IMG/VR virus record: IMGVR_UViG_3300025121_000011
Span: 271,170-335,169 of that record
DNA: 64,000 bases
Reading direction: 5' to 3' (one strand)
Under the pieces are notes generated by a model. The model was given only the letters and a program-made list of their open reading frames with translations. It had not been told where the DNA came from and did not search any database. Both the position numbers and the translations under genes were made by a program. Of the stretch, positions 7,140 through 54,066 are shown in pieces; position 1 is the first letter of the stretch, and the number at the start of each line of letters is the position of its first letter.

Positions 7140-7168
7140 TTTTAACTTTAACTTTATCTGAGGTGTTC

Positions 7169-7562: not shown

Positions 7563-7667
7563 AACCAAGTCGGAGAAGTCCTCCCAATTACATTAATATT
7601 ACGGTTACGGGGTTTGGAGTTTTTCACCTCACGAAAGACCAACATTTTTCAAAGGAGGAATCAAATC

Positions 7668-8662: not shown

Positions 8663-8822
8663 GGCGGCAAAAGCTTTACAGCAACTTTAAAAAAATATCC
8701 CCCGTAGTAACTAAGAGGTGCAGGGGCAAGGTTCCAGACTCCAGCCCGGTAGCCCCTGCCGACCGGGCGGCCAAAACGGCCTTCTAACTCTAAAAAAATA
8801 TTCTATAGAGTAATATAAGGCC
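8663..8822 (+). promoter_or_regulatory. two tandem copies of the phage promoter-like motif
   Basis: copies at 8663-8720 and 8766-8822 upstream of ORF 8865. Confidence 0.65.
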
Positions 8823-8864
8823 AGCCGCCTGAGCGGCAAATAACAACAAACAGAGAGGTGTGAG

Positions 8865-9467: not shown

Positions 9468-9514
9468 TCGATACGGATGTGATTGTGTGTGATTGGGAAT
9501 TGAAAATGATTTAA

Positions 9515-9583
9515 GATTCAGTCTTTCCCGGCGATAAAAACCGGGAAAGACATCTCTGCTTCCTCAGATGATCGATTAAACTG
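9515..9583 (-). CRISPR. solitary diverged repeat plus spacer
   Basis: 37-nt element 9515-9551 aligns to the family-1 repeat without gaps (22/37, CCCGG/CCGGG stem kept); 9552-9578 is a 27/27 match to 24782-24808. Confidence 0.55.
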
Positions 9584-9587
9584 CTTT

Positions 9588-9615
9588 CGGGACAAGCTTT
9601 CGGGTTTGTCCCGTT
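9588..9615 (+). terminator. GC-rich hairpin, possible terminator
   Basis: CGGGACAAGC...GTTTGTCCCG inverted repeat. Confidence 0.35.
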
Positions 9616-9729
9616 CCTGCGTTTACGATGTCAAATTTTTGCCGCCCACGCATATGTGCAACTCTAAAAAAATATTCCACATAGTAATATAGGGCTGTAA
9701 GCAAACACCATTTCAAAGGAGATTATCCA

Positions 9730-9972
9730 ATGCGATTCCTGACCAGGCTTTTTTCCGCGATCTCTATTATCCTTGCCGCTCTGACTTCGGCCGTGTTTAC
9801 AGCTATTATCACCGGATTTGTTCTGATGCTTCTGTGGAACTGGTTGCTTGTTGGAGCTACCTCTGTGATCGGAGTGGGGCTTCCTGCAATCACTTGGCTT
9901 CAGGGTTGGGGGCTTTGTTTCCTTTGTACTATGCTTTTCAATAGTCGTTCAAAGATCGGGGCTTCTACCTGA
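9730..9972 (+). CDS. membrane protein
   Basis: AAAGGAG RBS; promoter motif at 9662-9697; hydrophobic helices. Confidence 0.7.
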   Translation: MRFLTRLFSAISIILAALTSAVFTAIITGFVLMLLWNWLLVGATSVIGVGLPAITWLQGWGLCFLCTMLFNSRSKIGAST

Positions 9973-9988
9973 CATCTGCCTGAATAAA

Positions 9989-10064
9989 GGGACGTTAACT
10001 CAATTGGTAGAGTAGCGGACTTTTAATCCGTTTGTTTGGGGTTCGAGTCCCCAACGTCCCACCA
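9989..10064 (+). tRNA. tRNA-Lys(TTT)
   Basis: cloverleaf; GCGGA-ctTTTaa-TCCGT; CCA end. Confidence 0.93.
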
Positions 10065-10170
10065 TTTAATAACGAGCGGTTCCGGAAAAAGCTATCCGGA
10101 TAGTGAGAGTGGCGAAGGTCTCACGAACAAGTGGAGTAGCTTCCATACGATCCTGATCCCCATAAGTTAC

Positions 10171-10250
10171 AATCCGGTGGTAGCTCAGCAAGGTTAGAGC
10201 GCTCAGACAACTGAGAAAACGCGGGTTCAATTCCCGCCCCCGTATTACTA
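10171..10250 (+). ncRNA. tRNA-like element with a 4-nt anticodon loop
   Basis: D arm GCTC...GAGC; CTCAG-acaa-CTGAG; T arm GCGGG-TTCAATT-CCCGC; poor acceptor stem. Confidence 0.5.
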
Positions 10251-10405
10251 CGAAAGCGGTGATGGTGAGCAGCCCGAGATCTACAGTAATAGACGTATGA
10301 GTGGATGCGTTAGAGACACCTGCGGAGTCCTTGAGATGTTGATGTAAGGGTCTCACCACTATTTAACTTTTCTAACATTTAACCCTTTTAACAAAGGAGC
10401 TTCCG

Positions 10406-10804
10406 ATGCCTCTTGAAGATAATGAAAACCTTGCCATGGAATTGGTTCGGGTTGCTGATGTGATCCAAATTTCTATTTCCTACTTGACCAGGCTTGTTGA
10501 ATCCTTGGTAGCTCAAAACCCCTCTGATCGTTCAAGGAATGAAGGTGATGCCATCCTTAAGATGATTAATGAAAACAAAGATGCTCTGGCTGAGGGAGTT
10601 GCCGCTATCTATAGCAAGTATTGGTCTCCAGAGGTAATGCAAGCAGCTATTGATTGGAATAATAGTGCTTCATGCATGGAGATGAAGGCGAAAACAGCAG
10701 TTGTCTCTGCGGAAGTAGAACAACTCTCGGGTGTGTGGATGCAACAGATTGTTGCTTCTGTTCTCGGTTCTGATGGTAATCAAACACTCGATACCCTCAA
10801 TTAA
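10406..10804 (+). CDS. DUF2059-like helical protein
   Basis: IYSKYWSPEVMQAAIDWNNS pattern; AAAGGAG RBS. Confidence 0.5.
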   Translation: MPLEDNENLAMELVRVADVIQISISYLTRLVESLVAQNPSDRSRNEGDAILKMINENKDALAEGVAAIYSKYWSPEVMQAAIDWNNSASCMEMKAKTAVVSAEVEQLSGVWMQQIVASVLGSDGNQTLDTLN

Positions 10805-10834
10805 GATTAATTCTTATACTTAAGAGGTGTAGTA

Positions 10835-11350
10835 ATGACTTGTGTAACTATGTATTTGATTGGTGGCCTTCAGTTTCTTGGGATTATAGTTGGAGTGATG
10901 TTAGTAACCGTACTCATTTTTGCCGGACCTGCTCTATTTTGGAGATGGGCTGTAGGCTTTAGGATGGTTGATTTTATCTGGAATGATCAGGACAAGGTAT
11001 ATAAACACGTCTGGATTCGGAAGAATCCGGGATGGCTTATCAGGTTTCTTGATCGTTTGACGCCAGGTTGGATTAAAAAGATTTCATCTTTTCTCTATAC
11101 TTGGTTTGAACGAACCATGCCAAAGTTGTTCATCATTCTGATGGGTTTACTTGTAGTCTCTATTTTGGGATTTGGTTCATACGGATACTCTCAGCAACAA
11201 GTCTTAATTTCATTCTCAGAAGAGTGTGAATACACTTGTCGAGAGGATGAAACCTCTCGACTCTGGGAAGAAGATGGAGATATCAAGTGTGCTTGCACTC
11301 CAGTTGGTGCAGAGGAAGTCTTTATCCTCGGACATATTCCTTGCGGATGA
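10835..11350 (+). CDS. membrane protein
   Basis: two hydrophobic segments; GAGG RBS. Confidence 0.65.
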   Translation: MTCVTMYLIGGLQFLGIIVGVMLVTVLIFAGPALFWRWAVGFRMVDFIWNDQDKVYKHVWIRKNPGWLIRFLDRLTPGWIKKISSFLYTWFERTMPKLFIILMGLLVVSILGFGSYGYSQQQVLISFSEECEYTCREDETSRLWEEDGDIKCACTPVGAEEVFILGHIPCG

Positions 11351-11386
11351 AATGAAAACCAAGGAAGAGTTTCTCAACTCTTCCGC

Positions 11387-11445
11387 GGCGGCAAAAACTT
11401 AACTGCATCTCTAAAAAAATATCCTCCGTAGTAACTAAGGGGTGT
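11387..11445 (+). promoter_or_regulatory. repeated phage promoter-like motif
   Basis: GGCGGCAAAA...CTCTAAAAAAATAT...TAGTAA. Confidence 0.65.
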
Positions 11446-11543
11446 AAATCCAATAGGAATCGGAGATGACAGTGTTCCGAGCGTAAGAATGTTTGACTCT
11501 CCGATTTCTTTTTGGAAAAACCTTTACTACTCAGGAGTATCTA

Positions 11544-11801
11544 ATGTCTTGTACGTGTCGCGATAACACTGGATGTTCAGTTTGTGATCCTTCTTGGGAG
11601 TCTGATTTGGAATCGTTTTTCGATTTCTCGTGTGAAGAGTGGCCGGATTTGTCCAACCTTCTCGATAGGGAGCCTTGGCTTCAAGATGTGATTGCATCGG
11701 CATATCTCAACGGCGCCATGCAAAAAGATGATGATGAAAATGAAGCGGCTTTTGATCAGTATCTGGCGATAGAAGATTACAACATCGATGACTCCGATTG
11801 A
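11544..11801 (+). CDS. very acidic small protein
   Basis: AGGAG RBS; D/E-rich with an N-terminal Cys cluster. Confidence 0.6.
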   Translation: MSCTCRDNTGCSVCDPSWESDLESFFDFSCEEWPDLSNLLDREPWLQDVIASAYLNGAMQKDDDENEAAFDQYLAIEDYNIDDSD

Positions 11802-11867
11802 AATATTCTTTCTGTATTTCCTAAAGACTGTTGGCAAATAGGGCTTATTTTATAAGGAGAATTACTC

Positions 11868-12158
11868 ATGGCTATTTATGTATCAAATGCTGATAGTGTT
11901 CCAAAGTGTCAGCATTGGGCTATTCTCAAGTTTCAAACAATCCATATTCCCGGTGATGAAAGAAGTCGAACAAATCCCGGGCACGGATATGGTCCTTCTA
12001 CAGAAACCACTTGTTCATATGTTGCATATATGAACGAACAGGAGTGGGTGGTAGAAGTTCAAAAACTTGCGTCCCGAGCATTTCCTTCGGATGACTTTAT
12101 TGCAATCAAGGTAATTCCCGCCACAATTACTACAAAGGTAAGCGTTAGCGTATCTTGA
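11868..12158 (+). CDS. hypothetical protein
   Basis: AAGGAG RBS. Confidence 0.65.
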   Translation: MAIYVSNADSVPKCQHWAILKFQTIHIPGDERSRTNPGHGYGPSTETTCSYVAYMNEQEWVVEVQKLASRAFPSDDFIAIKVIPATITTKVSVSVS

Positions 12159-26025: not shown

Positions 26026-26991
26026 ATGAAGCTTGAAGAAATTGGTTTTTATAGTTTGCACGATGAGCGAGCCAAAAATACTTCGTCCTCTTCTCCTATG
26101 CAACGATGCGAAGTTTTAATTACGGAGGATTGCAATTTTAGTTGTCCTTATTGCAAGATGAAGAAGAATAGTTCTTATCTTTCTTTTGAAGATGCAAAAA
26201 CCCTTATTGATTATTGGGCAGATGATGGATTAGTTAATATTCGATTCTCCGGAGGAGAGCCGACTATGAATCCGTATCTTTATCAGATGGTAGAATATGC
26301 TAAGAGTCGCGAGATTAAACGGATAGCTATTTCTACCAATGGCTCCATGGTAACCGAGGTTTATCACGATCTGGTTCAAGCGGGAGTAAATGACTTCTCT
26401 ATTTCACTTGATGCTTGTTGTGCATCTGATGGAGATATTATGGCAGGTGGTGTTGAGGGCTCTTTTAATAGGGTGATTGAAAATATCAAATATTTGTCAG
26501 CAAGAACATATGTTACGGTAGGAGTTGTTATTACTCATGAGAATGTTTCTAATGTGGCGAATATTGTTCGTTTTGCTCATGAACTTGGAGTTGCGGATAT
26601 TCGCTTGATTTCTGCTGCACAATATAATGTTCTTTTAAAAGGAGTAGAGGATATCGATCCACAGATACTTGAGGCTCACCCGATTCTTAAGTATCGAGTT
26701 AATAATATTTTAGCCGGCCATAATGTGCGCGGTATGAAAGATTGTGATTCTCATACTTGTTATTTAATTCAGGACGATTCTGTGGTAGTTAATGGGAAGC
26801 ATTATCCTTGTGTTATTCATATGAGGGAAAGTGGTAAACCAATTGGAAAGATTGGACCAAATATGCGACAGGAAAGAATTGCTTGGATGAAAAATCATGA
26901 TCCTCATGATGACCCGATATGCAGATCGAATTGCTTGGATATTTGTATTCTATACTCTAATAAGGTAAGATCATTTCACAAGGACATTTAA
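26026..26991 (+). CDS. radical SAM protein (MoaA/SPASM-twitch-like)
   Basis: CNFSCPYC, SGGEP, STNG motifs; C-terminal Cys cluster. Confidence 0.85.
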   Translation: MKLEEIGFYSLHDERAKNTSSSSPMQRCEVLITEDCNFSCPYCKMKKNSSYLSFEDAKTLIDYWADDGLVNIRFSGGEPTMNPYLYQMVEYAKSREIKRIAISTNGSMVTEVYHDLVQAGVNDFSISLDACCASDGDIMAGGVEGSFNRVIENIKYLSARTYVTVGVVITHENVSNVANIVRFAHELGVADIRLISAAQYNVLLKGVEDIDPQILEAHPILKYRVNNILAGHNVRGMKDCDSHTCYLIQDDSVVVNGKHYPCVIHMRESGKPIGKIGPNMRQERIAWMKNHDPHDDPICRSNCLDICILYSNKVRSFHKDI

Positions 26992-27028
26992 ACTAGTTAA
27001 ACATAAAAACTAAAAATATGAGGTAATA

Positions 27029-28117
27029 ATGCGATTTATTCATTTTCCAAAAATTGGTCAATTCAAGGATGCTATTCATTCGATTCGTCAACGAGGCGCT
27101 TATGTAGGTAGAGATGTTAATGGCGATATTATTTATGATAGTTCTATTTTGATGCCAAAAATTACATTCATTGGTTCTGTTAAAATGCATGGTACTAATT
27201 CTGCTGTATCTTTTCATCGTATGGAAGGAGTGAGGCAGGCTCAATCTAGGAATAAGATTTTATCTATAGAATCAGATAACAATGGATTTTGTAGATTTAC
27301 AGAGTCTATTCCCGAAGATGTTTGGGATTTTCTTTTTAATTCTCTATTATCTCCACTAATTACTGAGCCATATCTTTTTGGACGAGTAACGGTTTTTGGA
27401 GAATGGATTGGTCCCGGTGTTCAGGGTGGTGAAATTGGTATTAAATATCTTCCGAATAAAATCTTTGTAGTGTTCGGAGTATATGTTGGGGAGCGTGATG
27501 AATTAGAAGATAAAACTCCCACCGGATACTTTGTTCCTCTTTGTGATATTCCATCTTTCAATGATGAATCTTATCATCTGAATGATAATAGAATTTATTT
27601 AATTACTGATTTAGCTCCAACTTTCAAAATAGAAGTCGATTGTAATTATCCAGAAATTTCTAGGAATAAGTTGGTCGAATTAACTATGCAAGTTGAAGCT
27701 AAGTGCCCAGTCGCCAATTACTTTGGAATTGAAGGAACGGGAGAGGGCATCGTATGGTGCTCAATTACGGAAGGGTGGATGGGTCCAGATTTTTGGTTTA
27801 AGACCAAGGGAGAAAAGCATTCCGCTTCAAAGATAAAAAAGATAGCCGAAGTAGATGTAACAAAGGTAGAGGGAGTAATTGCGTTTTTAGAAGAGACTCT
27901 AACTGAAGTTAGATTGAATCAAGCTTTGGAATACTTAAAAGAAAAAGAGATGCCTATCGATCGAAGTAGCACAGGCGAGTTTGTTCGGTGGATGATCAAT
28001 GACGTTACTACTGAAGAGGCTATAATGATGGAAGCCTCAGGACTTACAGTAAAAGAAGTTGGTCCCAAATTAGGCACAGCCGCCAGGCAGTGGTTTTTTA
28101 ATCAACTTAATAAGTAG
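27029..28117 (+). CDS. RNA ligase, Rnl2 family
   Basis: nucleotidyltransferase motifs KMHGTN, FGEW, EGIVW, FKTKGEKH. Confidence 0.8.
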   Translation: MRFIHFPKIGQFKDAIHSIRQRGAYVGRDVNGDIIYDSSILMPKITFIGSVKMHGTNSAVSFHRMEGVRQAQSRNKILSIESDNNGFCRFTESIPEDVWDFLFNSLLSPLITEPYLFGRVTVFGEWIGPGVQGGEIGIKYLPNKIFVVFGVYVGERDELEDKTPTGYFVPLCDIPSFNDESYHLNDNRIYLITDLAPTFKIEVDCNYPEISRNKLVELTMQVEAKCPVANYFGIEGTGEGIVWCSITEGWMGPDFWFKTKGEKHSASKIKKIAEVDVTKVEGVIAFLEETLTEVRLNQALEYLKEKEMPIDRSSTGEFVRWMINDVTTEEAIMMEASGLTVKEVGPKLGTAARQWFFNQLNK

Positions 28118-35870: not shown

Positions 35871-36575
35871 ATGATTTGGTATATTGGAGATGTTCATTGT
35901 CGAGTTAAAGATATTAAAAAAATCGCCAATGATGCAGAATCGTCTTGTAATCCTCCTGCTGTGTTAATTCAAGTTGGAGATTTCGGATGTTTTTGGCCAA
36001 ATTATACAAAAGAAATGGATGCCTGGATCCATGCCCGCGCGTTAACGCGGGAATGGTCTATTCCAATTATTACATGCGGAGGAAATCACGATAATTGGAA
36101 TTTATTTCTAAAGCTAGAATCAGAAAGTGATGCAGATTTACTAGAGATTATTCCAGATTCTGGAATTTTTTATGCTCGTCGTGGGTCTGTAATAGATATT
36201 GGCGGCATATCTCACGGATTTTTAGGTGGAGCATTTTCAACAAATCAGTCTTCTCTTATAGAAAACATAGATTGGTGGCGTCGTGAGGAACCAAATCGAG
36301 AAGAGTTCGACAGATTTTATCAAAATCTTTTAACATATCATCCAGATACAATCATTACGCATGAAGCTCCACGCTGTGTTTCTTATGATAGAATAGGAAG
36401 AAATTCAAATACCACAGTTAGGATGTTGGATAATTTGTTTTGGATGGCAATGAAAGATGGATATCAACCGAAACGACATTACTACGGACATCATCATATA
36501 TTAGAAAAAAGAAAAATAGCTGGAACAAAATTTTTCTGTTGTGGATACCACGGGGAATATTGGATTCGAGATTAG
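35871..36575 (+). CDS. calcineurin-like metallophosphoesterase
   Basis: GDVH, GDFG, GNHD, THEAP, GHHH motifs. Confidence 0.85.
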   Translation: MIWYIGDVHCRVKDIKKIANDAESSCNPPAVLIQVGDFGCFWPNYTKEMDAWIHARALTREWSIPIITCGGNHDNWNLFLKLESESDADLLEIIPDSGIFYARRGSVIDIGGISHGFLGGAFSTNQSSLIENIDWWRREEPNREEFDRFYQNLLTYHPDTIITHEAPRCVSYDRIGRNSNTTVRMLDNLFWMAMKDGYQPKRHYYGHHHILEKRKIAGTKFFCCGYHGEYWIRD

Positions 36576-38185: not shown

Positions 38186-39361
38186 ATGACTACATCACTT
38201 GAAGATCTTACCACTGCATTACCAACTTTATATGCTTTAGACAGCAGCGGACGTATCAAGGTCTGGTCCGTTAGCATATGCATACATTTGGATCAATCCG
38301 CTACATATACAGTAATTCACGGGCTTTTAGATGGAAAGAAACAGAGAAGCCCGCGCAAAATTACCAGCGGGAAAAATATTGGGAAAGCTAATGAAACTTC
38401 CCCATATGCTCAAGCGTTATCAGAAGCTCAAAGCAAATGGAAAAAACAGATTGACAAGGGATATGTAGAAGATGTGAATAACATTCCTGTCTGCACAGAG
38501 GTAGAATATTTTCTTCCGATGCTTGCTCAAAAATATACTGAGCGTAGTAAGCACATGAAATATCCTGCGTATGTGCAGCCAAAGTTCGATGGTTATCGAG
38601 CACTTAGTCGAAGAATCGGTAAGCAAGTTGTTCTATGGTCTAGAACCGGGAAGCCATTTTTTACCCTGGATATTATCGTTTCTGAATTAGAATCGATAAT
38701 AAGTTCAAATGAATGTTTAGATGGGGAAGTTTATAGGCATGACTGGAGAAGTCCATCTAATGAGCCCGACTTTCAAAGAGTTTCTTCGGCAATTAAAAAG
38801 AGAAAGGCAGATACAGATTTGTTAGAATATCATGTTTATGATCGTCCAATTCCAGAGAAGCCTGAAGCCTCATTCTATGAGCGGTTTTATAAACCAGCGT
38901 TCATTGACGGCACTTTAGTTGGCAGTGACCATGTTAAAATTGTCCCCACTGCATTGGTGGCATCAGAAGAAGAAATGATGCTTCTTTTTAATCAATGGGT
39001 CAGTGAAGACCTTCCGTATGAAGGTGCTATCGTTAGAAATGCTTCTGGTGTATATGGATTTGACACCAGAAGCAATGATCTTCTGAAGGTAAAGGATTTT
39101 CAAGAAGAAGAGTATGAAATCATTGGAGCTAAAGAAGGTACCGGAAAAGACGAGGGTACTGCAATCTTCTTATGTAAGATGAAGGATGGTACAGAATTTG
39201 ATAGTCGTCCGGTAGGCTCTTATGAGCAGAGAGCAGAATATTTAACTAACATTAGTAAATATATAGGCAGATATCTTCGGGTAAGATTTAATGGTCTGTC
39301 TAATCTTGGGGTTCCACGCTTTAATCGTGGCGTAGGTATCAGAGAAGAATGGGATATGTAA
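38186..39361 (+). CDS. lig: ATP-dependent DNA ligase
   Basis: QPKFDGYR, LDGEV, YEGAIVR and LLKVK motifs; OB-fold C-terminus. Confidence 0.9.
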   Translation: MTTSLEDLTTALPTLYALDSSGRIKVWSVSICIHLDQSATYTVIHGLLDGKKQRSPRKITSGKNIGKANETSPYAQALSEAQSKWKKQIDKGYVEDVNNIPVCTEVEYFLPMLAQKYTERSKHMKYPAYVQPKFDGYRALSRRIGKQVVLWSRTGKPFFTLDIIVSELESIISSNECLDGEVYRHDWRSPSNEPDFQRVSSAIKKRKADTDLLEYHVYDRPIPEKPEASFYERFYKPAFIDGTLVGSDHVKIVPTALVASEEEMMLLFNQWVSEDLPYEGAIVRNASGVYGFDTRSNDLLKVKDFQEEEYEIIGAKEGTGKDEGTAIFLCKMKDGTEFDSRPVGSYEQRAEYLTNISKYIGRYLRVRFNGLSNLGVPRFNRGVGIREEWDM

Positions 39362-40192: not shown

Positions 40193-40636
40193 ATGAACTC
40201 CTATCAGCGAAGAAAAAATCGTCGTTTTTTTAGCAAACTAATTAAAGCCCATCAAAATGGGCGACGAGGTAATTGGGCTTACTCTAGGGGCGGTAAGAAA
40301 TATGATTGTGAAGTATTTTTTGGTGTAGATAGAATAAGTTTATTATCAAAAGATAGGCGAAGTGTAGTTGTAACTTGGACACCCTCTTTCCCCATGCAGA
40401 TACGAAGTTTAAAGTTTTTAGAAGAATATTATGGAGAGGATTCTGAGCTGAGATTCTTTCCTGCCTTTAGATTAAAAAATACCGATTATGTTATTATTCC
40501 GGGATTGCTAAAGGGTTCTATACAGTGGATCTCCCTCCCATTATTAAGAAATGCTTCTTTTGATGAAGTATTTAATGTTCTGACTAGTGCTCAGAAGAAG
40601 GAAATCATTTGGGTTTTTGATATACTTAGAGGATAG
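40193..40636 (+). CDS. hypothetical protein sharing its C-terminal tail with the Imm5-like family
   Basis: SFDEVFNVLTSAQKKEIIWVFDI versus DFSEIFEMLTDEQKKLVIYNMDV. Confidence 0.6.
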   Translation: MNSYQRRKNRRFFSKLIKAHQNGRRGNWAYSRGGKKYDCEVFFGVDRISLLSKDRRSVVVTWTPSFPMQIRSLKFLEEYYGEDSELRFFPAFRLKNTDYVIIPGLLKGSIQWISLPLLRNASFDEVFNVLTSAQKKEIIWVFDILRG

Positions 40637-40640
40637 TGTA

Positions 40641-41462
40641 ATGAAAAAAATTGCAATAATTGGAGATATTCATGGTCGTTTAGATATGTTGATGAAAATG
40701 CATCTGAAAATCAGAGATGCATATGGAGATTTACAATTATATTCAACAGGTGATTTAATTGATCGAGGACCTGATGCCAGTGGTGTGATACAATATTGTA
40801 TTGATAATAATGTAAAGGCTGTTAGAGGCAATCATGATGATTGGCTTAGACAATTATGTGTAAATTATACATTTGACTCTCTTTCTATGCACGAGGTAAT
40901 GGGAGGTAGATATACCGCCGTCTCTTATGGAGTTCAATCGGCAATTGTAGGGGAAAATAATAGGGAGATTGCCGAAGACCTTTTTAAAAAGGTTCCTACT
41001 TCACATAAGAATTGGTTATCTGCACTACCTATTTATTGTAAAATAGTAATGGATTCTGGAGAAGTTTATTGGATAACGCATGCGGGTTTAACAATCCCTA
41101 TGGCAAACGATTTAACAGATGGTTTGTCAAAAGTTTCTGACGATATGCTTATGGCTAGCATTAATACTCCTGATCTTATTGAAACCTTTATATGGACTCG
41201 GCCAAATTTTCCAAAAATATTTGATGAGTCTACACCAGTTAAAAAAAGTACGCATGGCAACAATCTATACCATTTTAAAAATGGAGCTATTCAGGTATTT
41301 GGTCATAGCGTAACTGGATATCCAGTTATAGATAAACATTATATCGCAATTGATACTGGATGTGGAACACTTAAACGGGAGAAGTTAACCGCAGTTGTTT
41401 TACCAGATAATGTATTTATTACAGTGGACGATTTTGAATTGAGTGGAGATCAGAGCAAATGA
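40641..41462 (+). CDS. PPP-family metallophosphatase (Pnkp-phosphatase/PrpA-like)
   Basis: GDIHG, GDLIDRG, GNHD, HAG, FGH, IDTG motifs. Confidence 0.85.
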   Translation: MKKIAIIGDIHGRLDMLMKMHLKIRDAYGDLQLYSTGDLIDRGPDASGVIQYCIDNNVKAVRGNHDDWLRQLCVNYTFDSLSMHEVMGGRYTAVSYGVQSAIVGENNREIAEDLFKKVPTSHKNWLSALPIYCKIVMDSGEVYWITHAGLTIPMANDLTDGLSKVSDDMLMASINTPDLIETFIWTRPNFPKIFDESTPVKKSTHGNNLYHFKNGAIQVFGHSVTGYPVIDKHYIAIDTGCGTLKREKLTAVVLPDNVFITVDDFELSGDQSK

Positions 41463-48343: not shown

Positions 48344-48952
48344 ATGTTAAGGATGGTTGGGCCCAAAATTCCTATGGATATTTATGTGGCGGCTTCTGGT
48401 GGACCAGACAGCATGGCTGTCTTGGATTTTCTTATTCGTGGTGGTCGTAAAATTACAGTTTTACATTTTGATCATGGGACTAAACATGGAGAAGATGCTA
48501 GAGAGTTTATTAGGGAGTATTGTCAGTCGAGAGATATTAAACTGATTATTGGAAATGAGATTAGAGAGCGAGACTCTAACGAGTCTATGGAAGAATATTG
48601 GCGTGATATGCGATATCAGTTTCTTGATCAGTATTCAGATAAGCCAATTGTCATGGCACATAATCTTGATGATCAGGTGATGAGTTGGGTATTTACTTCT
48701 TTGAATGGATTGCCAAAACTTATTCCTTATAACAGAAGGAACGTTATCCGTCCTTTCATTGTAACTTCTAAGCAGAATATGATTGATTGGTGTGAGCGAA
48801 ATGGGGTTCCGTATTTAACGGACCCAAGTAATGATGATACAAGATATATGAGAAATTTTATTAGAAAAGAAATTCTTCCTTCAGCTTTAGTTGTTAATCC
48901 AGGATTATATAAAGTAATCTTAAAGAAGATTTTAAGAAATTTTGAAGGATAA
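48344..48952 (+). CDS. tilS: tRNA(Ile)-lysidine synthetase (PP-loop domain only)
   Basis: SGGPDS, DHG, RY.F, AHNLDDQ, IRP, DPSN...RNFIR. Confidence 0.88.
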   Translation: MLRMVGPKIPMDIYVAASGGPDSMAVLDFLIRGGRKITVLHFDHGTKHGEDAREFIREYCQSRDIKLIIGNEIRERDSNESMEEYWRDMRYQFLDQYSDKPIVMAHNLDDQVMSWVFTSLNGLPKLIPYNRRNVIRPFIVTSKQNMIDWCERNGVPYLTDPSNDDTRYMRNFIRKEILPSALVVNPGLYKVILKKILRNFEG

Positions 48953-49012: not shown

Positions 49013-50464
49013 ATGAGTTTTGTAGACGCAATGACTTCTAATGATATGCTTACAGAAAATGGTGCCGTTACTCACAGCACCTCAGGAAAAGCAATTATGG
49101 ATATGTTTTTCCAGATCGGTGGTATGCGTGGCCATAGTGGTGAAGATGTAATTTCTTTATTTACTAAGGCTCTTGGAGAAGATCCTTTAACGGCAATGAA
49201 GATCTTGTTTTATAACCGCGATATTCGTGGTGGACAAGGAGAGCGGCAAACTTTTCGTTATATTATGTCTTATCTTGCTCAGTATCATCCGGAGCTTATT
49301 CGAAAGAATATGCATTTGATTCCGGAATACGGTCGGTGGGATGATATGTTTGTGTTTGTTGGAACCGGATTGGAGAATGATGCTTTTGCTTTAATTCGCA
49401 CTGCATTGCATGAGCAAAACGGTTTAGCCGCAAAGTGGTGTCCTCGTTTGAAGTCTTCTAAAAAGATTTTAGCAGCAAAACTGTGTGCATATCTTGGAAT
49501 GACTCCGAAGCAATATCGTCAAACGCTTGCGAGACTTACCAAGGTTGTTGAAACTCCAATGTGCGCTAATCAGTGGGAAGATATTAACTTTAGTCAGGTC
49601 CCTTCGGTAGCAATGAAAAATTATCGCAAGTCATTTGCGAGACATACTCCCAACGAGTGGGAACAGTATCTTGCTGCTTTAGAAAAGGGCGACCCGGCTG
49701 TTAAGATTAATGCAAGCGCTATTTTCCCACATGACATTATCAAACAGTGGGTTGCTGGTTCAGTCGGTTATTATAGGGTTACATCTCCAGATCGTCAAGA
49801 GATTCGCGCAGCCGAAGCACAGTGGAATGCTTTGCCTGATTATATGGGTGAGAATTCTGGAAAGGTATTGGTTATGGCCGATGTTTCGGGTTCTATGTAT
49901 TCTGGTTTAAATCCCAGTTTAGCTCCAATTCAGGCTTCCGTTTCTTTGGCGCTGTATTGTGCCGAACGATGTAAGGGGCCTTTTAAGAATTTTTACATGA
50001 GTTTTTCTGGAAATCCAGAATTTGTAAAGGTTCAAGGAAGTAATATTTACGAAAAAGTTATTAATATCAACAATAAAAATGTTGGATATAACACTGATAT
50101 TAATCGTGCTTTTGCGGTATTGTTGAGTCGCGCAAAGCAGCACTCTGTTTCACAGGCCGACATGCAAGAAACTTTATTGATTCTTTCAGATATGCAATTT
50201 GATTGCAGCGAAATTAGTGGAAAGACTAATTTTGAAACGATTCGAGATCAGTACCGTGCATCTGGTTATCAACTTCCTCAGATTGTTTTTTGGAATTTGA
50301 ATTCTAAGGGTGGTGTTCCGGTAAAAATAACTGATGATGGAGTAGCTTTAGTGTCCGGGTTTAGCCCAAGTATTCTTACTGCAATCCTGGGTGGAGAAGT
50401 ATCGCCCATGGCAGTTTTGAATAGGGCAATTCATAGTGGACGATATGATGCGGTAACTCTTTGA
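49013..50464 (+). CDS. DUF2828 family protein with C-terminal vWA domain (Ro60/TROVE-like architecture)
   Basis: TENG, RDIRGGQGER, YGRWDD, AAKWCPR; MIDAS DVSGSM; ILSDMQFD, IVFWNL, VSGFSP. Confidence 0.82.
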   Translation: MSFVDAMTSNDMLTENGAVTHSTSGKAIMDMFFQIGGMRGHSGEDVISLFTKALGEDPLTAMKILFYNRDIRGGQGERQTFRYIMSYLAQYHPELIRKNMHLIPEYGRWDDMFVFVGTGLENDAFALIRTALHEQNGLAAKWCPRLKSSKKILAAKLCAYLGMTPKQYRQTLARLTKVVETPMCANQWEDINFSQVPSVAMKNYRKSFARHTPNEWEQYLAALEKGDPAVKINASAIFPHDIIKQWVAGSVGYYRVTSPDRQEIRAAEAQWNALPDYMGENSGKVLVMADVSGSMYSGLNPSLAPIQASVSLALYCAERCKGPFKNFYMSFSGNPEFVKVQGSNIYEKVININNKNVGYNTDINRAFAVLLSRAKQHSVSQADMQETLLILSDMQFDCSEISGKTNFETIRDQYRASGYQLPQIVFWNLNSKGGVPVKITDDGVALVSGFSPSILTAILGGEVSPMAVLNRAIHSGRYDAVTL

Positions 50465-50656: not shown

Positions 50657-51292
50657 ATGCGAATTTGCACCTCAAATCCCGGCAAGGTATCTGAGTTTGG
50701 AGGGCTTCTCGCACCTCTAGATATTAACCTAGATGTGTCTGGAGATTACGATATTCCAGAAACCGGTATAACTTTTGCAGATAACTCGCGAGAAAAAATT
50801 CTGGGTTATGCCAAGCATTATTCTGGAGAATGGTTATTGGCAGATGATTCTGGATTAGTAATTCCAGCTTTAAATAATTTGCCAGGCCCATTTAGCGCGC
50901 GATTTAGTGATCTTGATCTTGATACGTTAATGATTGTATCAAGTGGAGATGATCGAGAAGTAATTGATTTAAAAAATAACAATCGTGTATTAGAGTTACT
51001 TAGTAATATTCCTCACGATAATCGTGGAGCTTACTTTGTGGCTTGTATTACTGTTTTAAATCCAGATGGAAAAGTTTCTTTCCAAGTAGAACGCAGAGCG
51101 TATGGTTATATTTCCAAAGAACTTCGTGGGAAAAATGGATTTGGATATGATCCTCTTTTCATTTCAGATAATAGCTTTGGCAAAACATGGGCAGAAATTG
51201 ATAAGGCTAGAAAGTCTTTAATCAGTCATCGATCTAAAGCTATTTGGGATTTCTTGGCTTGGATCTGCTCTACATCTGAGGTTATTTCATGA
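50657..51292 (+). CDS. rdgB: RdgB/HAM1 non-canonical purine NTP pyrophosphatase
   Basis: TSNPGK, DDSGL, PG..SAR, FGYDP, SHR motifs. Confidence 0.9.
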   Translation: MRICTSNPGKVSEFGGLLAPLDINLDVSGDYDIPETGITFADNSREKILGYAKHYSGEWLLADDSGLVIPALNNLPGPFSARFSDLDLDTLMIVSSGDDREVIDLKNNNRVLELLSNIPHDNRGAYFVACITVLNPDGKVSFQVERRAYGYISKELRGKNGFGYDPLFISDNSFGKTWAEIDKARKSLISHRSKAIWDFLAWICSTSEVIS

Positions 51293-51332
51293 GTATTCAG
51301 TTTACAATTAATGTCGTAGTAACTCGGTTTTA

Positions 51333-51917
51333 ATGATGGAATCAATACTTTTGCATTTTGATTCGGTTATAAATTCAATTAAGATTGGAATGCCAACAGG
51401 TAGGCTCCGTGTGCCAGATATAATTTCTGTGCTTGGCGTCGAACCACCTAAGAGAATTGGGCGTGAATTGTTTCTTGCAAGTGGGCGATTTGTTTATTTT
51501 TATTCTAGAACAAAAGTTTATCCACAAATGGTTGCCATGAATGATCTTGATGTGGCCTTTGTTGGGTCGGACGCCTTAGAGGCTGGTCCTTATGCTCAAC
51601 AGTGTAATGTTGTTTGGTCAGAGCTACAGCAAGGCGTAAGAGTAGTCCTGGCTGGCTCTACACAAATCTCTAAGGGTAAGCTGCTCCGAGTAGTTACCCC
51701 ATTTCCAGAATGGGCTCAGAAGGTCATTGGCGAGCTAGGAATTCCTCATACGATTTACGCAGTAACGGGCGGATCAGAGGGTTTGGTTGCTCATGGTTTG
51801 GCTGATGCCGTATTTGATATTGTTGAGACTGGAGAAACATTAAGAGATAATGGATTGGAAATTTTAATGGATTTCGGACAACTTCATACATGCTGTATTG
51901 TTAAGAGTAAGCCATGA
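51333..51917 (+). CDS. hisG: ATP phosphoribosyltransferase (short form, divergent)
   Basis: PTGRL, D.AFVG.D, G..E and ADAVFDIVETGETLRDNGL motifs. Confidence 0.8.
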   Translation: MMESILLHFDSVINSIKIGMPTGRLRVPDIISVLGVEPPKRIGRELFLASGRFVYFYSRTKVYPQMVAMNDLDVAFVGSDALEAGPYAQQCNVVWSELQQGVRVVLAGSTQISKGKLLRVVTPFPEWAQKVIGELGIPHTIYAVTGGSEGLVAHGLADAVFDIVETGETLRDNGLEILMDFGQLHTCCIVKSKP

Positions 51918-52798
51918 TTGAACTAGATTCTATGACGATGGATACATTTCGCCAACAACCATTAGTAGTAGAAGGTGAAAGCAAAGAAATTAGAGAGCAT
52001 CCAGAAGATCCAGAAAAAGTATTAATTTGGTTAAAGCCCACAATCTATAGCTTCACAGAAAATCGTTGTGCTTGGGTCGAAGGATCAAATCTTTTGAGAG
52101 CAAGAGCTATGAAAATCATTGTTCCTTTATTGCAAAGTAAAGGAATAGATCATGCTTATCAAGATATTTCCGATGTAACTGGTTTGATTTCGGCCAGAAA
52201 AATCCATCCGTCAGAAGACCCAAATGTAGAGGTAATCGTAAAGAGATTTAATAGTGGCACATCTTATCATCGTTATTATGGAATGGCGGCTAAGCCAACG
52301 AGGGGATCTCATAAGTTATGGCCCGGGGAAGTTGTTGGAAAGTATGAGCCATATCGTGGACCAAAGATTAGGTTTGACTGGAGGAATCCATTCTGGATTC
52401 CAGAATTAGTAATGAAGCTTCGTAAGACTAATCCGTTACTTCCAGCGGAAGTTTATAAGTGGCCTGATGAATTGCGTCAAGGCATTATGATGCGTGATGA
52501 AGTCTTGGGAGAGGATTTTGCTTCCGAGCTAATTGATACAAAGCAAGCTAGGAAAACTGCTCTATGGACATATGCAGTTTTACAAAATTATATGGGTGAA
52601 AGAAATATCGTTATATATGATATGTGTTTGTTTATTACATCAGATGGTAAAACTGTATATGGTGAAATCAATCAAGACTCTGGACGATTTAGACATTTAG
52701 ATTATGGAATGTTGGATAAGGATGTCTGGAGAGCAGGAGGCTCCATTGGAGATGTTTTAGAAAAATGGCAGATGCTAACTGTTATGTTACAAGAATAA
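51914..52798 (+). CDS. purC: SAICAR synthetase (PurC)-like protein, divergent
   Basis: EGESKEI, VEVIVK...GT, GEINQDSGR, LDKDVWR. Confidence 0.65.
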   Translation: MIELDSMTMDTFRQQPLVVEGESKEIREHPEDPEKVLIWLKPTIYSFTENRCAWVEGSNLLRARAMKIIVPLLQSKGIDHAYQDISDVTGLISARKIHPSEDPNVEVIVKRFNSGTSYHRYYGMAAKPTRGSHKLWPGEVVGKYEPYRGPKIRFDWRNPFWIPELVMKLRKTNPLLPAEVYKWPDELRQGIMMRDEVLGEDFASELIDTKQARKTALWTYAVLQNYMGERNIVIYDMCLFITSDGKTVYGEINQDSGRFRHLDYGMLDKDVWRAGGSIGDVLEKWQMLTVMLQE

Positions 52799-52818
52799 TG
52801 ACAGAAGGTTTGTGAAAT

Positions 52819-54066
52819 ATGATTATACCAAGTATTGATATTCAGGGCGGCAAAGTAGTTCAGCTTATTGAGGGCAGGGAGTTAGCATTAACTGTAGATG
52901 TTCCATACGCTTTAGCTGAAAAGTTTTCTCGCGTTGGAGAGTTTGCTGTTATAGATTTAGACGCTGCTATGGGTTTGGGTAATAATCGAGAGATTGTAGA
53001 ATCTTTAGTAAGAAAATATCCAGTTAGAGTTGGTGGTGGTATTAGGAATATATCAGATGCATTATATTGGTTAAATGCCGGGGCGTCAAAGATTATTATT
53101 GGAACCGCCGCTGTTCCAAATTTTATTTCACAACTTCCTCGTGATCGAATTATTGTAGCTTTAGATTCTTATAATGACGATGTTGTTATAAATGGTTGGA
53201 CTACAAGAACTGGACGTAATGTTGCCCAAGCTATGCAAGATGTTTTACCATATACATCTGGATTCTTAATTACTTTTGTAGAGAAAGAAGGAAGGTTAGA
53301 TGGCACAAACTTAGACAGGACTAAGTTTTTAGTTGATGCCGCAAATGGTGCGCGCATCACTTTTGCAGGAGGAATTACAACTGCTAATGATATAGCATAT
53401 CTAGATTCTATTGGTGCCGATTCGCAGGTCGGAATGGCTCTTTACACTGGAAAGCTTTTATTATCGGAAGGGTTCGCTTCTGTTTTGAAAAGTGATCGAA
53501 GCGATGGACTTTGGCCAACAGTTGTTCAAGATGAATCTGGAGTATTAGGTTTAGTATATTCAAATCAAGAAAGTCTTCATACATCAATTGAATCTGGTGA
53601 AGGTGTATATTGGTCAAGAAGAACCGGTTTATGGAAGAAGGGAAACTTTTCTGGCAATACACAATCAATAGTAAATATTAAAGTAGATTGTGATCGAGAT
53701 GCTTTGCTTTTTACAGTAAAGCAGCATGGTGAGGGATTCTGTCATACCGGTTCTTATCAATGTTTTAATTCAATGGATGCACTATTTGAACTTGAACAAA
53801 CATTAGAGCGCAAGAAACATTCTAATGATTTAGAATCTTATACATATAACTTATTTGAGCAATCAAATATCTTAAGAAATAAGATCATGGAAGAGGCGGC
53901 TGAATTATGTGACGCCCATAGTAATAGTGAGGTTATTCATGAGGCGGCAGATCTGATATATTTTATGATGACTTATCTTTCTTTACATGATGTAACTTTA
54001 GCTGATATTAAGAAAGAAATTAAACGTCGGTCATTAGTGATTGCAAGAAGGAAAAGTAAAGAGTGA
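52819..54066 (+). CDS. hisA: HisA-HisI-HisE fusion (ProFAR isomerase, PR-AMP cyclohydrolase, PR-ATP pyrophosphatase)
   Basis: IIPSIDIQGGKVVQL, VGGGIR; YWSRR...DCDRDALL...CHTG...C; KIMEEAAE...EAADL. Confidence 0.85.
   Translation: MIIPSIDIQGGKVVQLIEGRELALTVDVPYALAEKFSRVGEFAVIDLDAAMGLGNNREIVESLVRKYPVRVGGGIRNISDALYWLNAGASKIIIGTAAVPNFISQLPRDRIIVALDSYNDDVVINGWTTRTGRNVAQAMQDVLPYTSGFLITFVEKEGRLDGTNLDRTKFLVDAANGARITFAGGITTANDIAYLDSIGADSQVGMALYTGKLLLSEGFASVLKSDRSDGLWPTVVQDESGVLGLVYSNQESLHTSIESGEGVYWSRRTGLWKKGNFSGNTQSIVNIKVDCDRDALLFTVKQHGEGFCHTGSYQCFNSMDALFELEQTLERKKHSNDLESYTYNLFEQSNILRNKIMEEAAELCDAHSNSEVIHEAADLIYFMMTYLSLHDVTLADIKKEIKRRSLVIARRKSKE

What the first reader, a model, noticed from the sequence alone, without database searches (positions are those of the whole stretch)
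50657..54066. rdgB-hisG-purC-like-hisA/I/E: first half of histidine synthesis coupled to purine enzymes
Seen: four adjacent genes encode a HAM1 pyrophosphatase, short HisG, a divergent PurC with insertions and a HisA-HisI-HisE fusion. No hisF/H/B/C/D or hisZ is in the window. Established: HisG, E, I and A turn ATP and PRPP into PRFAR, which HisFH splits into AICAR (ZMP) and IGP; PurC ligates aspartate to CAIR; short HisG normally needs HisZ. Inference: the cluster is unlikely to make histidine. It may feed ZMP or purine pools, or build an unusual imidazole nucleotide (base modification or signal), with RdgB cleaning the NTP pool.
Basis: partly seen in the sequence, partly recalled or inferred. 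Interest (0 to 1): 0.72.

Follow-up and report, generated by a model that had tools for sequence, protein, structure and literature searches.

The report
Phage operon making purine-analogue nucleotide
A groundwater jumbo phage carries a four-gene operon that runs the first four steps of histidine synthesis into a divergent PurC-like enzyme next to an ITP-destroying enzyme; the same undescribed module, often fused into one protein, recurs in Lak megaphages, giant viruses and tiny symbiotic bacteria, and most likely makes a coformycin-like purine-analogue nucleotide, not histidine.

Summary
Window 50657-54066 holds four tightly packed + strand genes: an active-looking Ham1/RdgB, a short HisG, a SAICAR-synthetase-fold protein that no PurC model recognises, and a HisA-HisI-HisE fusion. 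The complete 335 kb phage genome has no HisF, HisH, HisB, HisD or HisZ, so histidine is not the product.

These genes belong to a conserved, apparently undescribed module: HisG, HisE/I/A, PurC-like, Ham1 and usually an NMP kinase. In CPR bacteria, DPANN archaea and Myxococcota it is a regular operon. In many proteins the domains are fused, up to six in one chain. All 15 Lak megaphages and several giant-virus MAGs carry versions of it.

The only characterised pathway with this enzyme logic is pentostatin/coformycin synthesis: a HisG homologue, host HisI/E/A, then a SAICAR-synthetase homologue. I therefore infer a coformycin-type purine-analogue nucleotide. It may protect adenine nucleotides from deaminases, with Ham1 removing (d)ITP.

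The weak points: no reductase is present, direct relatedness to PenC/CofB could not be tested, and a few carrier genomes lack his genes. Novelty: new variant of a known kind. Interest is high.

The parts
50657..51292 (+). Ham1/RdgB-type non-canonical purine NTP (ITP/dITP/XTP) pyrophosphatase, predicted active
   Evidence: Pfam Ham1p_like E 9.8e-44; NCBIfam XTP/dITP diphosphatase E 1e-39. Alignment to solved RdgB/dITPases keeps SNPGK, ETG.TF.N, ADDSGL, GFGYDP.F and SHR motifs. Ham1 is linked to the PurC-like gene in 37 of 80 loci and fused to it in several proteins.
51333..51917 (+). Short-form ATP phosphoribosyltransferase (HisG) with no regulatory C-terminal domain; the genome has no HisZ
   Evidence: Pfam HisG E 6.5e-20. 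NCBIfam hisG 69 bits, below the 75.75 cut-off. The nearest solved protein is the short HisG of L. lactis (1z7m), and the PRPP-loop signature DIVETGETL is kept. No HisZ-type domain in the genome. In the sister clade the same gene is a kinase-HisG fusion.
51914..52798 (+). PurC-like protein: SAICAR-synthetase fold, member of a small distinct family; proposed to consume the HisA product
   Evidence: Pfam SAICAR_synt E 1.8e-4 only; no NCBIfam match. AF2 pLDDT 91 and Foldseek TM 0.85 to PurC structures. Only 252 representatives among 1.84 billion proteins. Own motifs are GESKEIR, KPTIYSFTxNR, VRFDWRNP, GEISQDCGRFRH and LDKDVWRAGGS. Its start overlaps the hisG stop by 4 nt.
52819..53481 (+). HisA-type (ProFAR isomerase) barrel domain of the fusion protein (residues about 1-221)
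   Evidence: Pfam His_biosynth 1-213, E 9.4e-40; NCBIfam HisA 152 bits vs HisF 41 bits. The beta1 Asp (PSIDI) and beta5 Asp (VALDS) are kept. The subfamily signature is TF[VH]xxEG in place of TDIxRDG.
53482..53778 (+). HisI (phosphoribosyl-AMP cyclohydrolase) domain of the fusion (residues about 222-320)
   Evidence: Pfam PRA-CH 245-317, E 3.9e-27. Aligns end to end with solved HisIE 6j2l, E 3.4e-25.
53779..54066 (+). HisE (phosphoribosyl-ATP pyrophosphohydrolase) domain of the fusion (residues about 321-415, plus stop)
   Evidence: Pfam PRA-PH 324-404, E 1.9e-15; NCBIfam HisIE 159 bits; alignment to 6j2l.

Best explanation
The four genes are one operon and a phage version of a widespread, so far undescribed nucleotide-analogue module. 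Its members are HisG, HisE, HisI, HisA, a PurC-like enzyme, Ham1 and usually an NMP kinase.

Proposed mechanism. HisG joins PRPP to ATP or dATP. It is the short form, with no feedback domain and no HisZ. HisE, HisI and HisA then convert the adduct to PRFAR, an aminoketone. There is no HisF/HisH, so the PurC-like enzyme takes PRFAR. By analogy with PenC/CofB of the pentostatin/coformycin pathway, it closes a seven-membered 1,3-diazepine ring to give an 8-oxo-coformycin-type 5'-monophosphate. In most relatives a fused or adjacent NMP kinase would phosphorylate this product further; this phage lacks that kinase. Ham1 hydrolyses 6-oxopurine-like NTPs (ITP, dITP, XTP) to monophosphates.

Proposed role. 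The module would protect the adenine-nucleotide pool during infection in two ways. Its product would block adenosine/AMP/ATP-type deaminases, and Ham1 would remove their toxic or signalling product (d)ITP. The phage's own PurA and PurB could then turn IMP back into AMP.

Shown: gene content, operon structure, absence of the other his genes, fold, fusions, co-occurrence and distribution. Inferred: the substrate of the PurC-like enzyme, the diazepine product and the biological role.

My step-wise odds: not histidine 0.9; one pathway through PRFAR 0.75; diazepine-type product 0.45; anti-deaminase role 0.25-0.3.
For: (1) The genome is complete and has no HisF, HisH, HisB, HisD or HisZ, and no PurE.

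(2) Rosetta-stone fusions tie the activities together. Kinase-PurCL-HisA-HisI-HisE-HisG occurs in 13 representatives, HisG-kinase-PurCL in 19 and kinase-PurCL in 32. There are also PurCL-Ham1(-HisG-kinase) and HisA-HisI-HisE-HisG-kinase-PurCL forms.

(3) In 80 loci, the genes within 10 kb of the PurC-like gene include a kinase in 52, HisG in 40, Ham1 in 37 and HisA/I/E in about 19. The window's other neighbours are not co-conserved. CPR, DPANN and Myxococcota loci show the operon hisAIE-hisG-purCL-ham1-kinase with overlapping stops and starts.

(4) Published pathway logic: PenA (a HisG homologue) condenses dATP/ATP with PRPP, HisI/E/A convert the product, and the SAICAR-synthetase homologue PenC then acts on it (PMC11611020; PMC12648386). 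SAICAR-synthetase and hisG/priA homologues are core genes of the pentostatin, coformycin and adechlorin clusters (PMC13055916). Fungal Cns3 is a kinase-HisG fusion tied to pentostatin (PMC8719641), the same architecture as in the sister clade.

(5) HisA is retained, with its acid/base residues. Its only chemical effect is to create the enolisable aminoketone that either HisF or a CofB-type ring closure needs (inference).

(6) The PurC-like protein has the SAICAR synthetase fold and keeps the nucleotide/Mg motifs shared with PurC, yet no PurC equivalog model recognises it.

(7) Ham1 is catalytically intact. Defence by adenine-nucleotide deamination is established for RADAR, for Cad1 (from Bacteroidales, the order of the Lak hosts) and for Kongming, where dITP is the signal. 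Pentostatin and its 5'-phosphate are transition-state analogues of adenosine and AMP deaminases (PMC12273558).

(8) The phage also encodes PurA-type, PurB and IMPDH-family enzymes.
Against: No short-chain reductase (the CofA/PenB equivalent) is in the operon, in any fusion or among conserved neighbours. The only SDR-like gene in this phage is a sugar-nucleotide epimerase about 136 kb away. The ring hydroxyl made by that reductase is what mimics the attacking water in deaminases, so an 8-oxo product would need reduction or hydration by something else.

Direct relatedness to PenC/CofB was not tested. No actinomycete sequence appeared among 59 genome loci found with the family's motifs, nor in two top-120 homologue lists.

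Lak-C1 has HisG but no HisA. Two Saccharibacteria MAGs with kinase, PurCL and Ham1 have neither HisA nor HisG, although MAGs are incomplete.

In CPR genomes the operon sits among housekeeping genes, with PurA as the only recurrent neighbour. That suggests ordinary purine metabolism as much as warfare.

A kinase and an NTP pyrophosphatase in one module look antagonistic. The PurC-like family also keeps the LDKDxxR and E..D..R motifs of true ligases, so ATP- and aspartate-dependent ligation is not excluded.
Confidence: 0.45

Rival explanations
1. Purine-pool remodelling without a special product. The module converts adenine nucleotides into an ordinary purine intermediate (IMP or an AICAR-type ribotide). 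For example, the carboxamide nitrogen could close back onto the formimino carbon and release the aminoribulose phosphate. The product would feed the phage's or cell's PurA/PurB/IMPDH enzymes, and Ham1 would return ITP to IMP.
For: PurA is the only recurrent neighbour of the operon in cellular genomes (8 loci; 3 of 35 flanking genes). This phage encodes PurA-type, PurB and IMPDH/GMP-reductase-family enzymes. The module sits among housekeeping genes in CPR and DPANN organisms, which lack de novo purine synthesis. Three family members carry an N-terminal formamidase-family domain, which fits formimino/formamido chemistry.
Against: No HisF/HisH is present to release AICAR and no PurE. PurH was not searched. 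Ring re-closure to IMP would not need HisA, yet HisA is conserved in the fusions. A simple deaminase would do the same job far more cheaply. The NMP kinase has no obvious role.
Confidence: 0.2
2. Precursor of a modified base. The module makes a non-canonical purine NTP or dNTP that polymerases put into phage DNA or RNA, in the way PurZ/MazZ/DatZ supply dZTP.
For: NMP kinases of at least three different families (Adk-, Tmk- and Gmk-like) were recruited next to or fused with the PurC-like enzyme. That suggests the product is wanted as a di- or triphosphate. PenA is reported to use dATP.
Against: This phage has no partner kinase. The module also occurs in chromosomes of CPR bacteria, DPANN archaea, Myxococcota and giant viruses. 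An active Ham1 in the same operon would be expected to destroy a non-canonical purine NTP. No dedicated dATP-clearing enzyme was seen, and the PurA homologue is PurA-type, not PurZ.
Confidence: 0.1
3. Signal or cofactor mimic. The product is a small nucleotide messenger or an NAD-like dinucleotide that interferes with host signalling.
For: Lak phages insert a cytidylyltransferase-like nucleotidyltransferase (the NMNAT/PPAT superfamily) between Ham1 and the PurC-like gene. That enzyme could adenylate a ribotide carrying a carboxamide or oxo ring.
Against: The nucleotidyltransferase is confined to the Lak lineage (8 of 80 loci) and is absent from the window's operon. No receptor or effector gene is linked to the module.
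Confidence: 0.08
4. An ordinary auxiliary metabolic gene set. The phage boosts the first half of host histidine synthesis, and an unrelated canonical PurC and RdgB merely lie beside it.
For: Each protein taken alone has a housekeeping-type Pfam assignment.
Against: The same genes are fused into single proteins elsewhere. The PurC-like protein matches no PurC equivalog model, and the family has only 252 representatives. The HisG, HisA and HisIE parts all score below their equivalog cut-offs. The module occurs in Saccharibacteria and giant viruses, which have no histidine pathway context.
Confidence: 0.04

Closest known systems
Pentostatin (pen) cluster of Streptomyces antibioticus and coformycin (cof) cluster of S. 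kaniharaensis
   Same: A dedicated HisG homologue, the histidine enzymes HisE/HisI/HisA as middle steps, and then a SAICAR-synthetase-fold enzyme in place of HisF/HisH. The pen cluster, like Lak phages and the sister clade here, borrows HisI/E/A from the host.
   Different: The phage/CPR module has no short-chain reductase (PenB/CofA) and no phosphatase or export step. It adds Ham1 and usually an NMP kinase, so the end product is probably a nucleotide and not a secreted nucleoside. The PurC-like protein has its own signature motifs, which were not found in any actinomycete genome scanned. Whether it is related to PenC/CofB is untested.
Adechlorin (ade) cluster, with its recruited HisA/PriA homologue AdeK and HisG homologues AdeC/AdeL
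   Same: A specialised HisA-type isomerase and HisG homologue are recruited beside a SAICAR-synthetase homologue. Here too the module's HisA forms its own subfamily (TF[VH]xxEG signature).
   Different: There are no halogenase or tailoring genes. The hosts are viruses and ultra-small symbionts, not actinomycetes. HisI and HisE are fused to HisA.
Cns3 of the Cordyceps militaris cordycepin/pentostatin cluster
   Same: An N-terminal nucleoside/nucleotide kinase is fused to a C-terminal HisG domain linked to pentostatin formation. The sister clade of the window's operon has the same kinase-HisG architecture.
   Different: Cns3 is a fungal protein, and its kinase part serves cordycepin synthesis. 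No Ham1 or PurC-like partner is described in that cluster.
Canonical histidine operon (hisGDCBHAFIE) and housekeeping PurC
   Same: The first four reactions and their catalytic motifs, and the SAICAR synthetase fold.
   Different: HisF, HisH, HisB, HisD and HisZ are absent (HisC was not searched), and no PurE accompanies the PurC-like gene. Every component scores below its NCBIfam equivalog cut-off, and the PurC-like protein matches no model.
Phage nucleotide-pool counter-defence and pool-rewriting pathways (PurZ/MazZ/DatZ for dZ; T5 Dmp against Kongming)
   Same: Small operons of recruited nucleotide-metabolism enzymes, including an NTP pyrophosphatase and kinases, which reshape the purine pool during infection. 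Dmp blocks dITP signalling.
   Different: Here the chemistry starts from the histidine pathway, and the PurA homologue is not PurZ. No phage-made deaminase inhibitor turned up in the literature searches, which covered open-access papers and preprints only.

Membership tests
Pentostatin/coformycin-type pathway | Dedicated HisG (ATP/dATP phosphoribosyltransferase) homologue in the cluster | tested here: met
   Pfam HisG E 6.5e-20, PRPP loop kept. HisG is linked or fused to the PurC-like gene in 40 of 80 loci.
Pentostatin/coformycin-type pathway | HisE, HisI and HisA activities available to reach PRFAR | tested here: met
   The HisA-HisI-HisE fusion lies directly downstream, and its catalytic motifs align with solved enzymes.
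Pentostatin/coformycin-type pathway | SAICAR-synthetase-fold enzyme adjacent, in place of HisF/HisH | tested here: met
   AF2 model pLDDT 91; Foldseek TM 0.85 to PurC structures. No HisF or HisH in the genome.
Pentostatin/coformycin-type pathway | That enzyme belongs to the PenC/CofB/AdeA clade | tested here: inconclusive
   No PenC/CofB sequence could be obtained. No actinomycete locus carries the family's two signature motifs, and none appears in two top-120 homologue lists. A proper tree was not possible.
Pentostatin/coformycin-type pathway | NAD(P)H-dependent short-chain reductase (CofA/PenB) that makes the 8-hydroxyl | tested here: not met
   None in the operon, the fusions or the conserved neighbours. 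The only adh_short-like hit in the genome is a sugar epimerase/dehydratase about 136 kb away.
Pentostatin/coformycin-type pathway | A 1,3-diazepine nucleoside or nucleotide is produced | not testable with these tools
   Needs enzymology and LC-MS.
Histidine biosynthesis operon | HisF/HisH, HisB and HisD present | tested here: not met
   One His_biosynth barrel only, and it is HisA-type. No GATase, IGPD or histidinol dehydrogenase in the complete genome. HisC was not searched.
Histidine biosynthesis operon | A short HisG is accompanied by HisZ | tested here: not met
   No tRNA-synt_His (HisZ) domain in the genome.
Housekeeping PurC (SAICAR synthetase of de novo purine synthesis) | Recognised by curated PurC models, and pathway partners present | tested here: not met
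   Pfam 21.8 bits against a cut-off of 20, C-terminal part only. No NCBIfam match at E 1e-3. No PurE, although PurB is present. The family has only 252 representatives among 1.84 billion proteins.
Active RdgB/Ham1 (d)ITP/XTP pyrophosphatase | Catalytic Asp and the phosphate- and base-binding motifs | tested here: met
   SNPGK, ETG.TF.N, ADDSGL, GFGYDP.F and SHR align with solved RdgB/dITPases. This contrasts with the catalytically dead Kongming KomB. NCBIfam TIGR00042 scores 130.7, below its 145 cut-off.
Z-genome (PurZ) phage | The PurA homologue is PurZ-type | tested here: not met
   E 2e-60 to PurA against 2.5e-13 to 2.8e-6 for solved PurZ. GDExKGK and GGNNAGHT are kept. The NCBIfam PurZ model scores 94 against a cut-off of 300.

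The most novel reading that the evidence does not exclude
The module is a small-molecule counter-defence and pool-protection system. Viruses (jumbo phages, Lak megaphages, giant viruses) and obligate symbionts or predators would synthesise a phosphorylated coformycin-type transition-state inhibitor from ATP or dATP. This would shut down adenine-nucleotide deaminases of the host, such as RADAR RdrB, Cad1 and Kongming KomA. The linked Ham1 would destroy the (d)ITP that those enzymes make. I found no described case of a virus-encoded biosynthetic pathway for an enzyme-inhibitor natural product.
Probability: 0.2. Interest if true: 0.95.

Novelty: new variant of a known kind. Interest (0 to 1): 0.8.

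Why it matters
If the inference holds, a nucleoside-antibiotic type of chemistry known from actinomycetes and fungi is also used, in nucleotide form, by the largest known phages. These include all 15 Lak megaphage genomes in GenBank, from human and animal guts. Giant viruses and CPR/DPANN symbionts would use it too. That would add a metabolite-based layer to virus-host conflict over the purine pool, beside three recently described defences that deaminate ATP, dATP or dAMP. It would also assign a function to a conserved multi-domain enzyme family that is currently annotated only as 'SAICAR synthase' or hypothetical.

Even if the product differs, the fusions define a seven-activity pathway that starts from PRFAR and has no described end product. 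This can be tested directly with purified enzymes.

Tried and rejected
1. Direct comparison with PenC/CofB failed. There is no solved structure. The primary paper (Ren et al. 2020) is not held. No actinomycete hit appeared in the genome scan, in either homologue search or in plasmids.

2. The search for a reductase found none. The own-genome adh_short hit is a sugar epimerase. No SDR appeared among clustered neighbours or operon flanks. The unassigned parts of the fusions gave only a formamidase-family domain, a guanylate kinase or nothing. The ~320 aa linker in five kinase-PurCL-x-HisG proteins folded poorly (pLDDT 46), so it was not searched and stays unassigned. The 367-aa ORF downstream in the window has no recognisable fold.

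3. The Z-genome idea, raised by a short PurA homologue, was rejected: it is PurA-type.

4. The window's other neighbours (TilS-like, DUF2828, and the ORFs at 54121, 54779, 55053 and 56189) are not co-conserved with the module.

5. Promoter and terminator scans gave no more sites than shuffled sequence.

6. No RNA run holding the region was found, so there is no expression evidence, and read laying was not used.

7. AlphaFold DB cluster hits carried no organism names and gave no lead to PenC.

8. Another genetic code (TAG=Q) was used only to list ORFs in the Lak-C1 locus. The five Lak module genes contain no recoded codon, and the window reads cleanly under table 11.

Full report
**What is there.** The window is the last 64 kb of a complete 335,169-bp virus record with direct terminal repeats. 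The phage recurs in groundwater and soil metagenomes from several studies. At 50657-54066 four + strand ORFs are packed with gaps of 40 and 20 nt and one 4-nt overlap. They are a Ham1/RdgB pyrophosphatase, a 194-aa short-form HisG, a 294-aa protein with a marginal SAICAR_synt match, and a 415-aa HisA-HisI-HisE fusion. The identical third protein, with the same gene order, is present in at least 24 independent assemblies.

**State of the individual enzymes.**
- Ham1 keeps all catalytic, phosphate-binding and base-binding motifs of solved RdgB/dITPases.
- HisG is closest to the short HisG of L. lactis and keeps the PRPP loop. It has no regulatory domain, and the genome has no HisZ.
- The barrel of the fusion is HisA and not HisF (152 vs 41 bits), and the HisIE part aligns end to end with a solved HisIE.
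- Module-associated HisA domains form a subfamily of their own. The beta1 Asp is invariant, and the usual TDIxRDG motif reads TF[VH]xxEG.
- The third protein folds with high confidence (pLDDT 91) as a SAICAR synthetase (TM 0.85 by target, 13-21% identity). It shares the G-x-S-K, E..D..R and LDKDxxR motifs with PurC. No NCBIfam model recognises it.
- An exhaustive search of 1.84 billion representatives finds only 252 relatives. This is a small family distinct from housekeeping PurC.

**Not histidine, not canonical purine synthesis.** The complete genome has a single His_biosynth barrel. It has no GATase (HisH), IGPD (HisB), histidinol dehydrogenase (HisD) or HisZ, and no PurE. HisC and PurH were not searched. 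Without HisF/HisH, PRFAR cannot yield imidazole-glycerol phosphate or AICAR.

**One pathway.** Long members of the PurC-like family are fusion proteins:

| Architecture | Representatives |
|---|---|
| kinase-PurCL | 32 |
| HisG-kinase-PurCL | 19 |
| kinase-PurCL-HisA-HisI-HisE-HisG | 13 |
| HisA-HisI-HisE-HisG-kinase-PurCL | 2 |
| forms with Ham1 (PurCL-Ham1, HisG-PurCL-Ham1, kinase-HisG-PurCL-Ham1, PurCL-Ham1-HisG-kinase) | several |

In 80 loci from genome and virus collections, the genes within 10 kb of the PurC-like gene are as follows:

| Neighbour | Loci (of 80) |
|---|---|
| Tmk/Adk-like kinase | 52 |
| HisG | 40 |
| Ham1 | 37 |
| HisA/I/E | about 19 |

None of the window's other neighbours is co-conserved. 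CPR bacteria, a Woesearchaeote and Myxococcota carry a regular operon, hisAIE-hisG-purCL-ham1-kinase, with overlapping stops and starts. Its flanks are unrelated housekeeping genes, and only PurA recurs. The kinases come from different NMP-kinase families: Adk-, Tmk- and Gmk-like.

**Distribution.** The family occurs in:
- all 15 Lak megaphage genomes, the only hits among 50,697 GenBank phage records, with no hit in any plasmid;
- other virus contigs of 140-660 kb;
- giant-virus MAGs, as HisG-kinase-PurCL fusions;
- many CPR lineages, DPANN archaea, Myxococcota, Bdellovibrionota and Oligoflexia;
- a distant branch in Bradyrhizobium, Devosia and a Nostocales strain. There it sits beside HAD phosphatase, P450, aminotransferase, SAH-hydrolase-like, HD and GATase genes, a context typical of nucleoside natural-product clusters.

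In a FastTree of the domain, the window's copy is sister to the Lak-type copies (support 0.94) and nested among the Ham1-bearing CPR/Myxococcota operons. All 37 Ham1-linked copies fall in one 42-tip group, but that node is unsupported.

The closest relatives of the window's gene (64-71% identity) have Ham1, a kinase-HisG fusion and PurCL without HisA-I-E. They occur on phage contigs up to 0.5 Mb and in a Leptospiraceae MAG. The window's phage has instead lost the kinase and carries its own HisA-I-E.

**Closest precedent and proposed mechanism.** In pentostatin synthesis the HisG homologue PenA joins dATP/ATP to PRPP, HisI, HisE and HisA convert the product, the SAICAR-synthetase homologue PenC acts next, and the short-chain reductase PenB finishes (PMC11611020; PMC12648386). 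SAICAR-synthetase, hisG and priA/hisA homologues are the shared core of the pentostatin, coformycin and adechlorin clusters (PMC13055916). Fungal Cns3 is a kinase-HisG fusion tied to pentostatin (PMC8719641).

From my own knowledge of Ren et al., PNAS 2020 (not held in the library): CofB converts the HisA product into 8-ketocoformycin-5'-phosphate, releasing ammonia and erythronate-4-phosphate, with ATP acting only as an activator.

I therefore propose the route ATP or dATP + PRPP -> PRFAR -> 8-oxo-coformycin-type nucleotide. The retention of HisA supports this (inference). HisA's only effect is to create the enolisable aminoketone, which is needed either by HisF (absent here) or by a CofB-type carbon-carbon ring closure.

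**Possible role.** Pentostatin and its 5'-phosphate are transition-state analogues of adenosine and AMP deaminases (PMC12273558). Three bacterial defences act by deaminating adenine nucleotides:
- RADAR converts ATP/dATP to ITP/dITP (PMC9994260).
- Cad1 converts ATP to ITP, and was characterised from a Bacteroidales locus, the order of the Lak hosts (PMC11645235).
- Kongming uses dITP as its signal, sensed by a catalytically dead HAM1 (bioRxiv 10.1101/2024.12.20.629578).

An active phage Ham1 would remove exactly those products. A kinase would raise a monophosphate inhibitor to the level of the deaminases' di- and triphosphate substrates. The phage's PurA-type, PurB and IMPDH-family enzymes could recycle IMP.

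The module also lies in a part of the genome rich in tRNAs, RNA and DNA ligases, phosphoesterases and a TilS-like gene. This is weak contextual support for a host-conflict role. All of this paragraph is inference.

**Weak points.**
- No reductase is found anywhere in the module, the fusions or the flanks. The hydroxyl it would make is what mimics the attacking water.
- PenC/CofB could not be compared directly and do not appear among the family's detectable relatives.
- Lak-C1 has no HisA; its host could supply it, as in Streptomyces. Two Saccharibacteria MAGs carrying kinase, PurCL and Ham1 have neither HisA nor HisG.
- The housekeeping context in CPR genomes and the PurA linkage fit a plain purine-interconversion role about as well.
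- A kinase and an NTP pyrophosphatase together are not obviously coherent.

I put the full chain at 0.45 and keep a purine-salvage reading at 0.2.

**Novelty.** Full-text searches of about 8.4 million open-access papers and preprints found nothing linking coformycin or pentostatin, or this gene combination, to phages, giant viruses or CPR bacteria. Subscription journals are mostly not covered. I rate it a new variant of a known kind of pathway, with a real chance of a new biological use.

Noticed in passing
L093:12107-13675 (own genome, C1:34106-35674, outside the window): An IMPDH/GMP-reductase-family gene interrupted by an intein (Hint and intein-splicing domains at residues about 195-352). 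Without the intein it is about 360 aa and has no CBS pair, so whether it is a GuaB or a GuaC type is undecided.
   Followed up: partly
L093:8765-9805 and L094:5168-6481 (own genome): The phage encodes a short (346 aa) PurA-type adenylosuccinate synthetase and a full PurB (TIGR00928, 491 bits). Together with Ham1 they form an IMP-to-AMP route. The PurA homologue is not PurZ.
   Followed up: yes
window 48344-48952 and 49013-50464: Just upstream lie a TilS N-terminal-type PP-loop ATPase (lysidine synthetase domain, above the NCBIfam cut-off) and a DUF2828/DUF7788 protein (phrog_850, 'RNA-binding protein'). Neither is co-conserved with the module.
   Followed up: partly
window 7055-59191 (8 tRNA genes); 26026-28117; 35871-36575; 38186-39361; 40587-41462: The region holds eight tRNA genes, including two tRNA-Met(CAT). 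It also holds a radical-SAM protein, an RNA ligase, a DNA ligase and two phosphoesterases, an RNA-repair and translation-support neighbourhood.
   Followed up: no
L001:5324-9554 (Lak-C1) and L063-L068: The Lak megaphage version of the module is HisG, small kinase, Ham1, a cytidylyltransferase-like nucleotidyltransferase and PurC-like, preceded by an RNA-ligase-family gene. The nucleotidyltransferase is specific to the Lak lineage, and the complete Lak-C1 genome has no HisA.
   Followed up: partly
P0243:1-320, P0253:1-325, P0264:1-361: Three PurC-like family members carry an N-terminal acetamidase/formamidase-family domain (FmdA_AmdA). This hints at formimino or formamido chemistry in some branches.
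   Followed up: no
L043:6645-13494; L047:6748-14385: The distant Bradyrhizobium/Nostocales branch lies in clusters that look like nucleoside natural-product clusters. Partners include a MetRS-like protein, aminotransferase, HAD phosphatase and P450, or an SAH-hydrolase-like protein, HD, HAD, GATase and PhoD. These are cultivable organisms that could be tested.
   Followed up: partly
L004 (contig CALVSI010000024.1, labelled 'uncultured Bacilli bacterium' MAG): Its PurC-like gene groups inside the Lak-type phage clade, and the contig is only 9.7 kb. It is probably a Lak-like phage contig binned into a bacterial MAG.
   Followed up: no
P0181:418-738, P0194:432-739, P0195:416-738, P0196:413-716, P0218:417-759: Five kinase-PurCL-x-HisG proteins have a conserved ~320 aa middle segment with no Pfam match and a poor AlphaFold model (pLDDT 46). 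It may be a very divergent HisA/HisI or something new.
   Followed up: partly
window 1-12000: G+C is 0.42-0.50 in the first 12 kb, against 0.32-0.39 in the rest of the window. The cause was not examined.
   Followed up: no
hisA domains in L077, P0187, P0191 and other six-domain proteins: In the six-domain fusion type, the HisA beta5 motif reads (V/I)ELS(V/I) where the window's type has VALD. A residue usually counted as catalytic is thus replaced in that branch.
   Followed up: no
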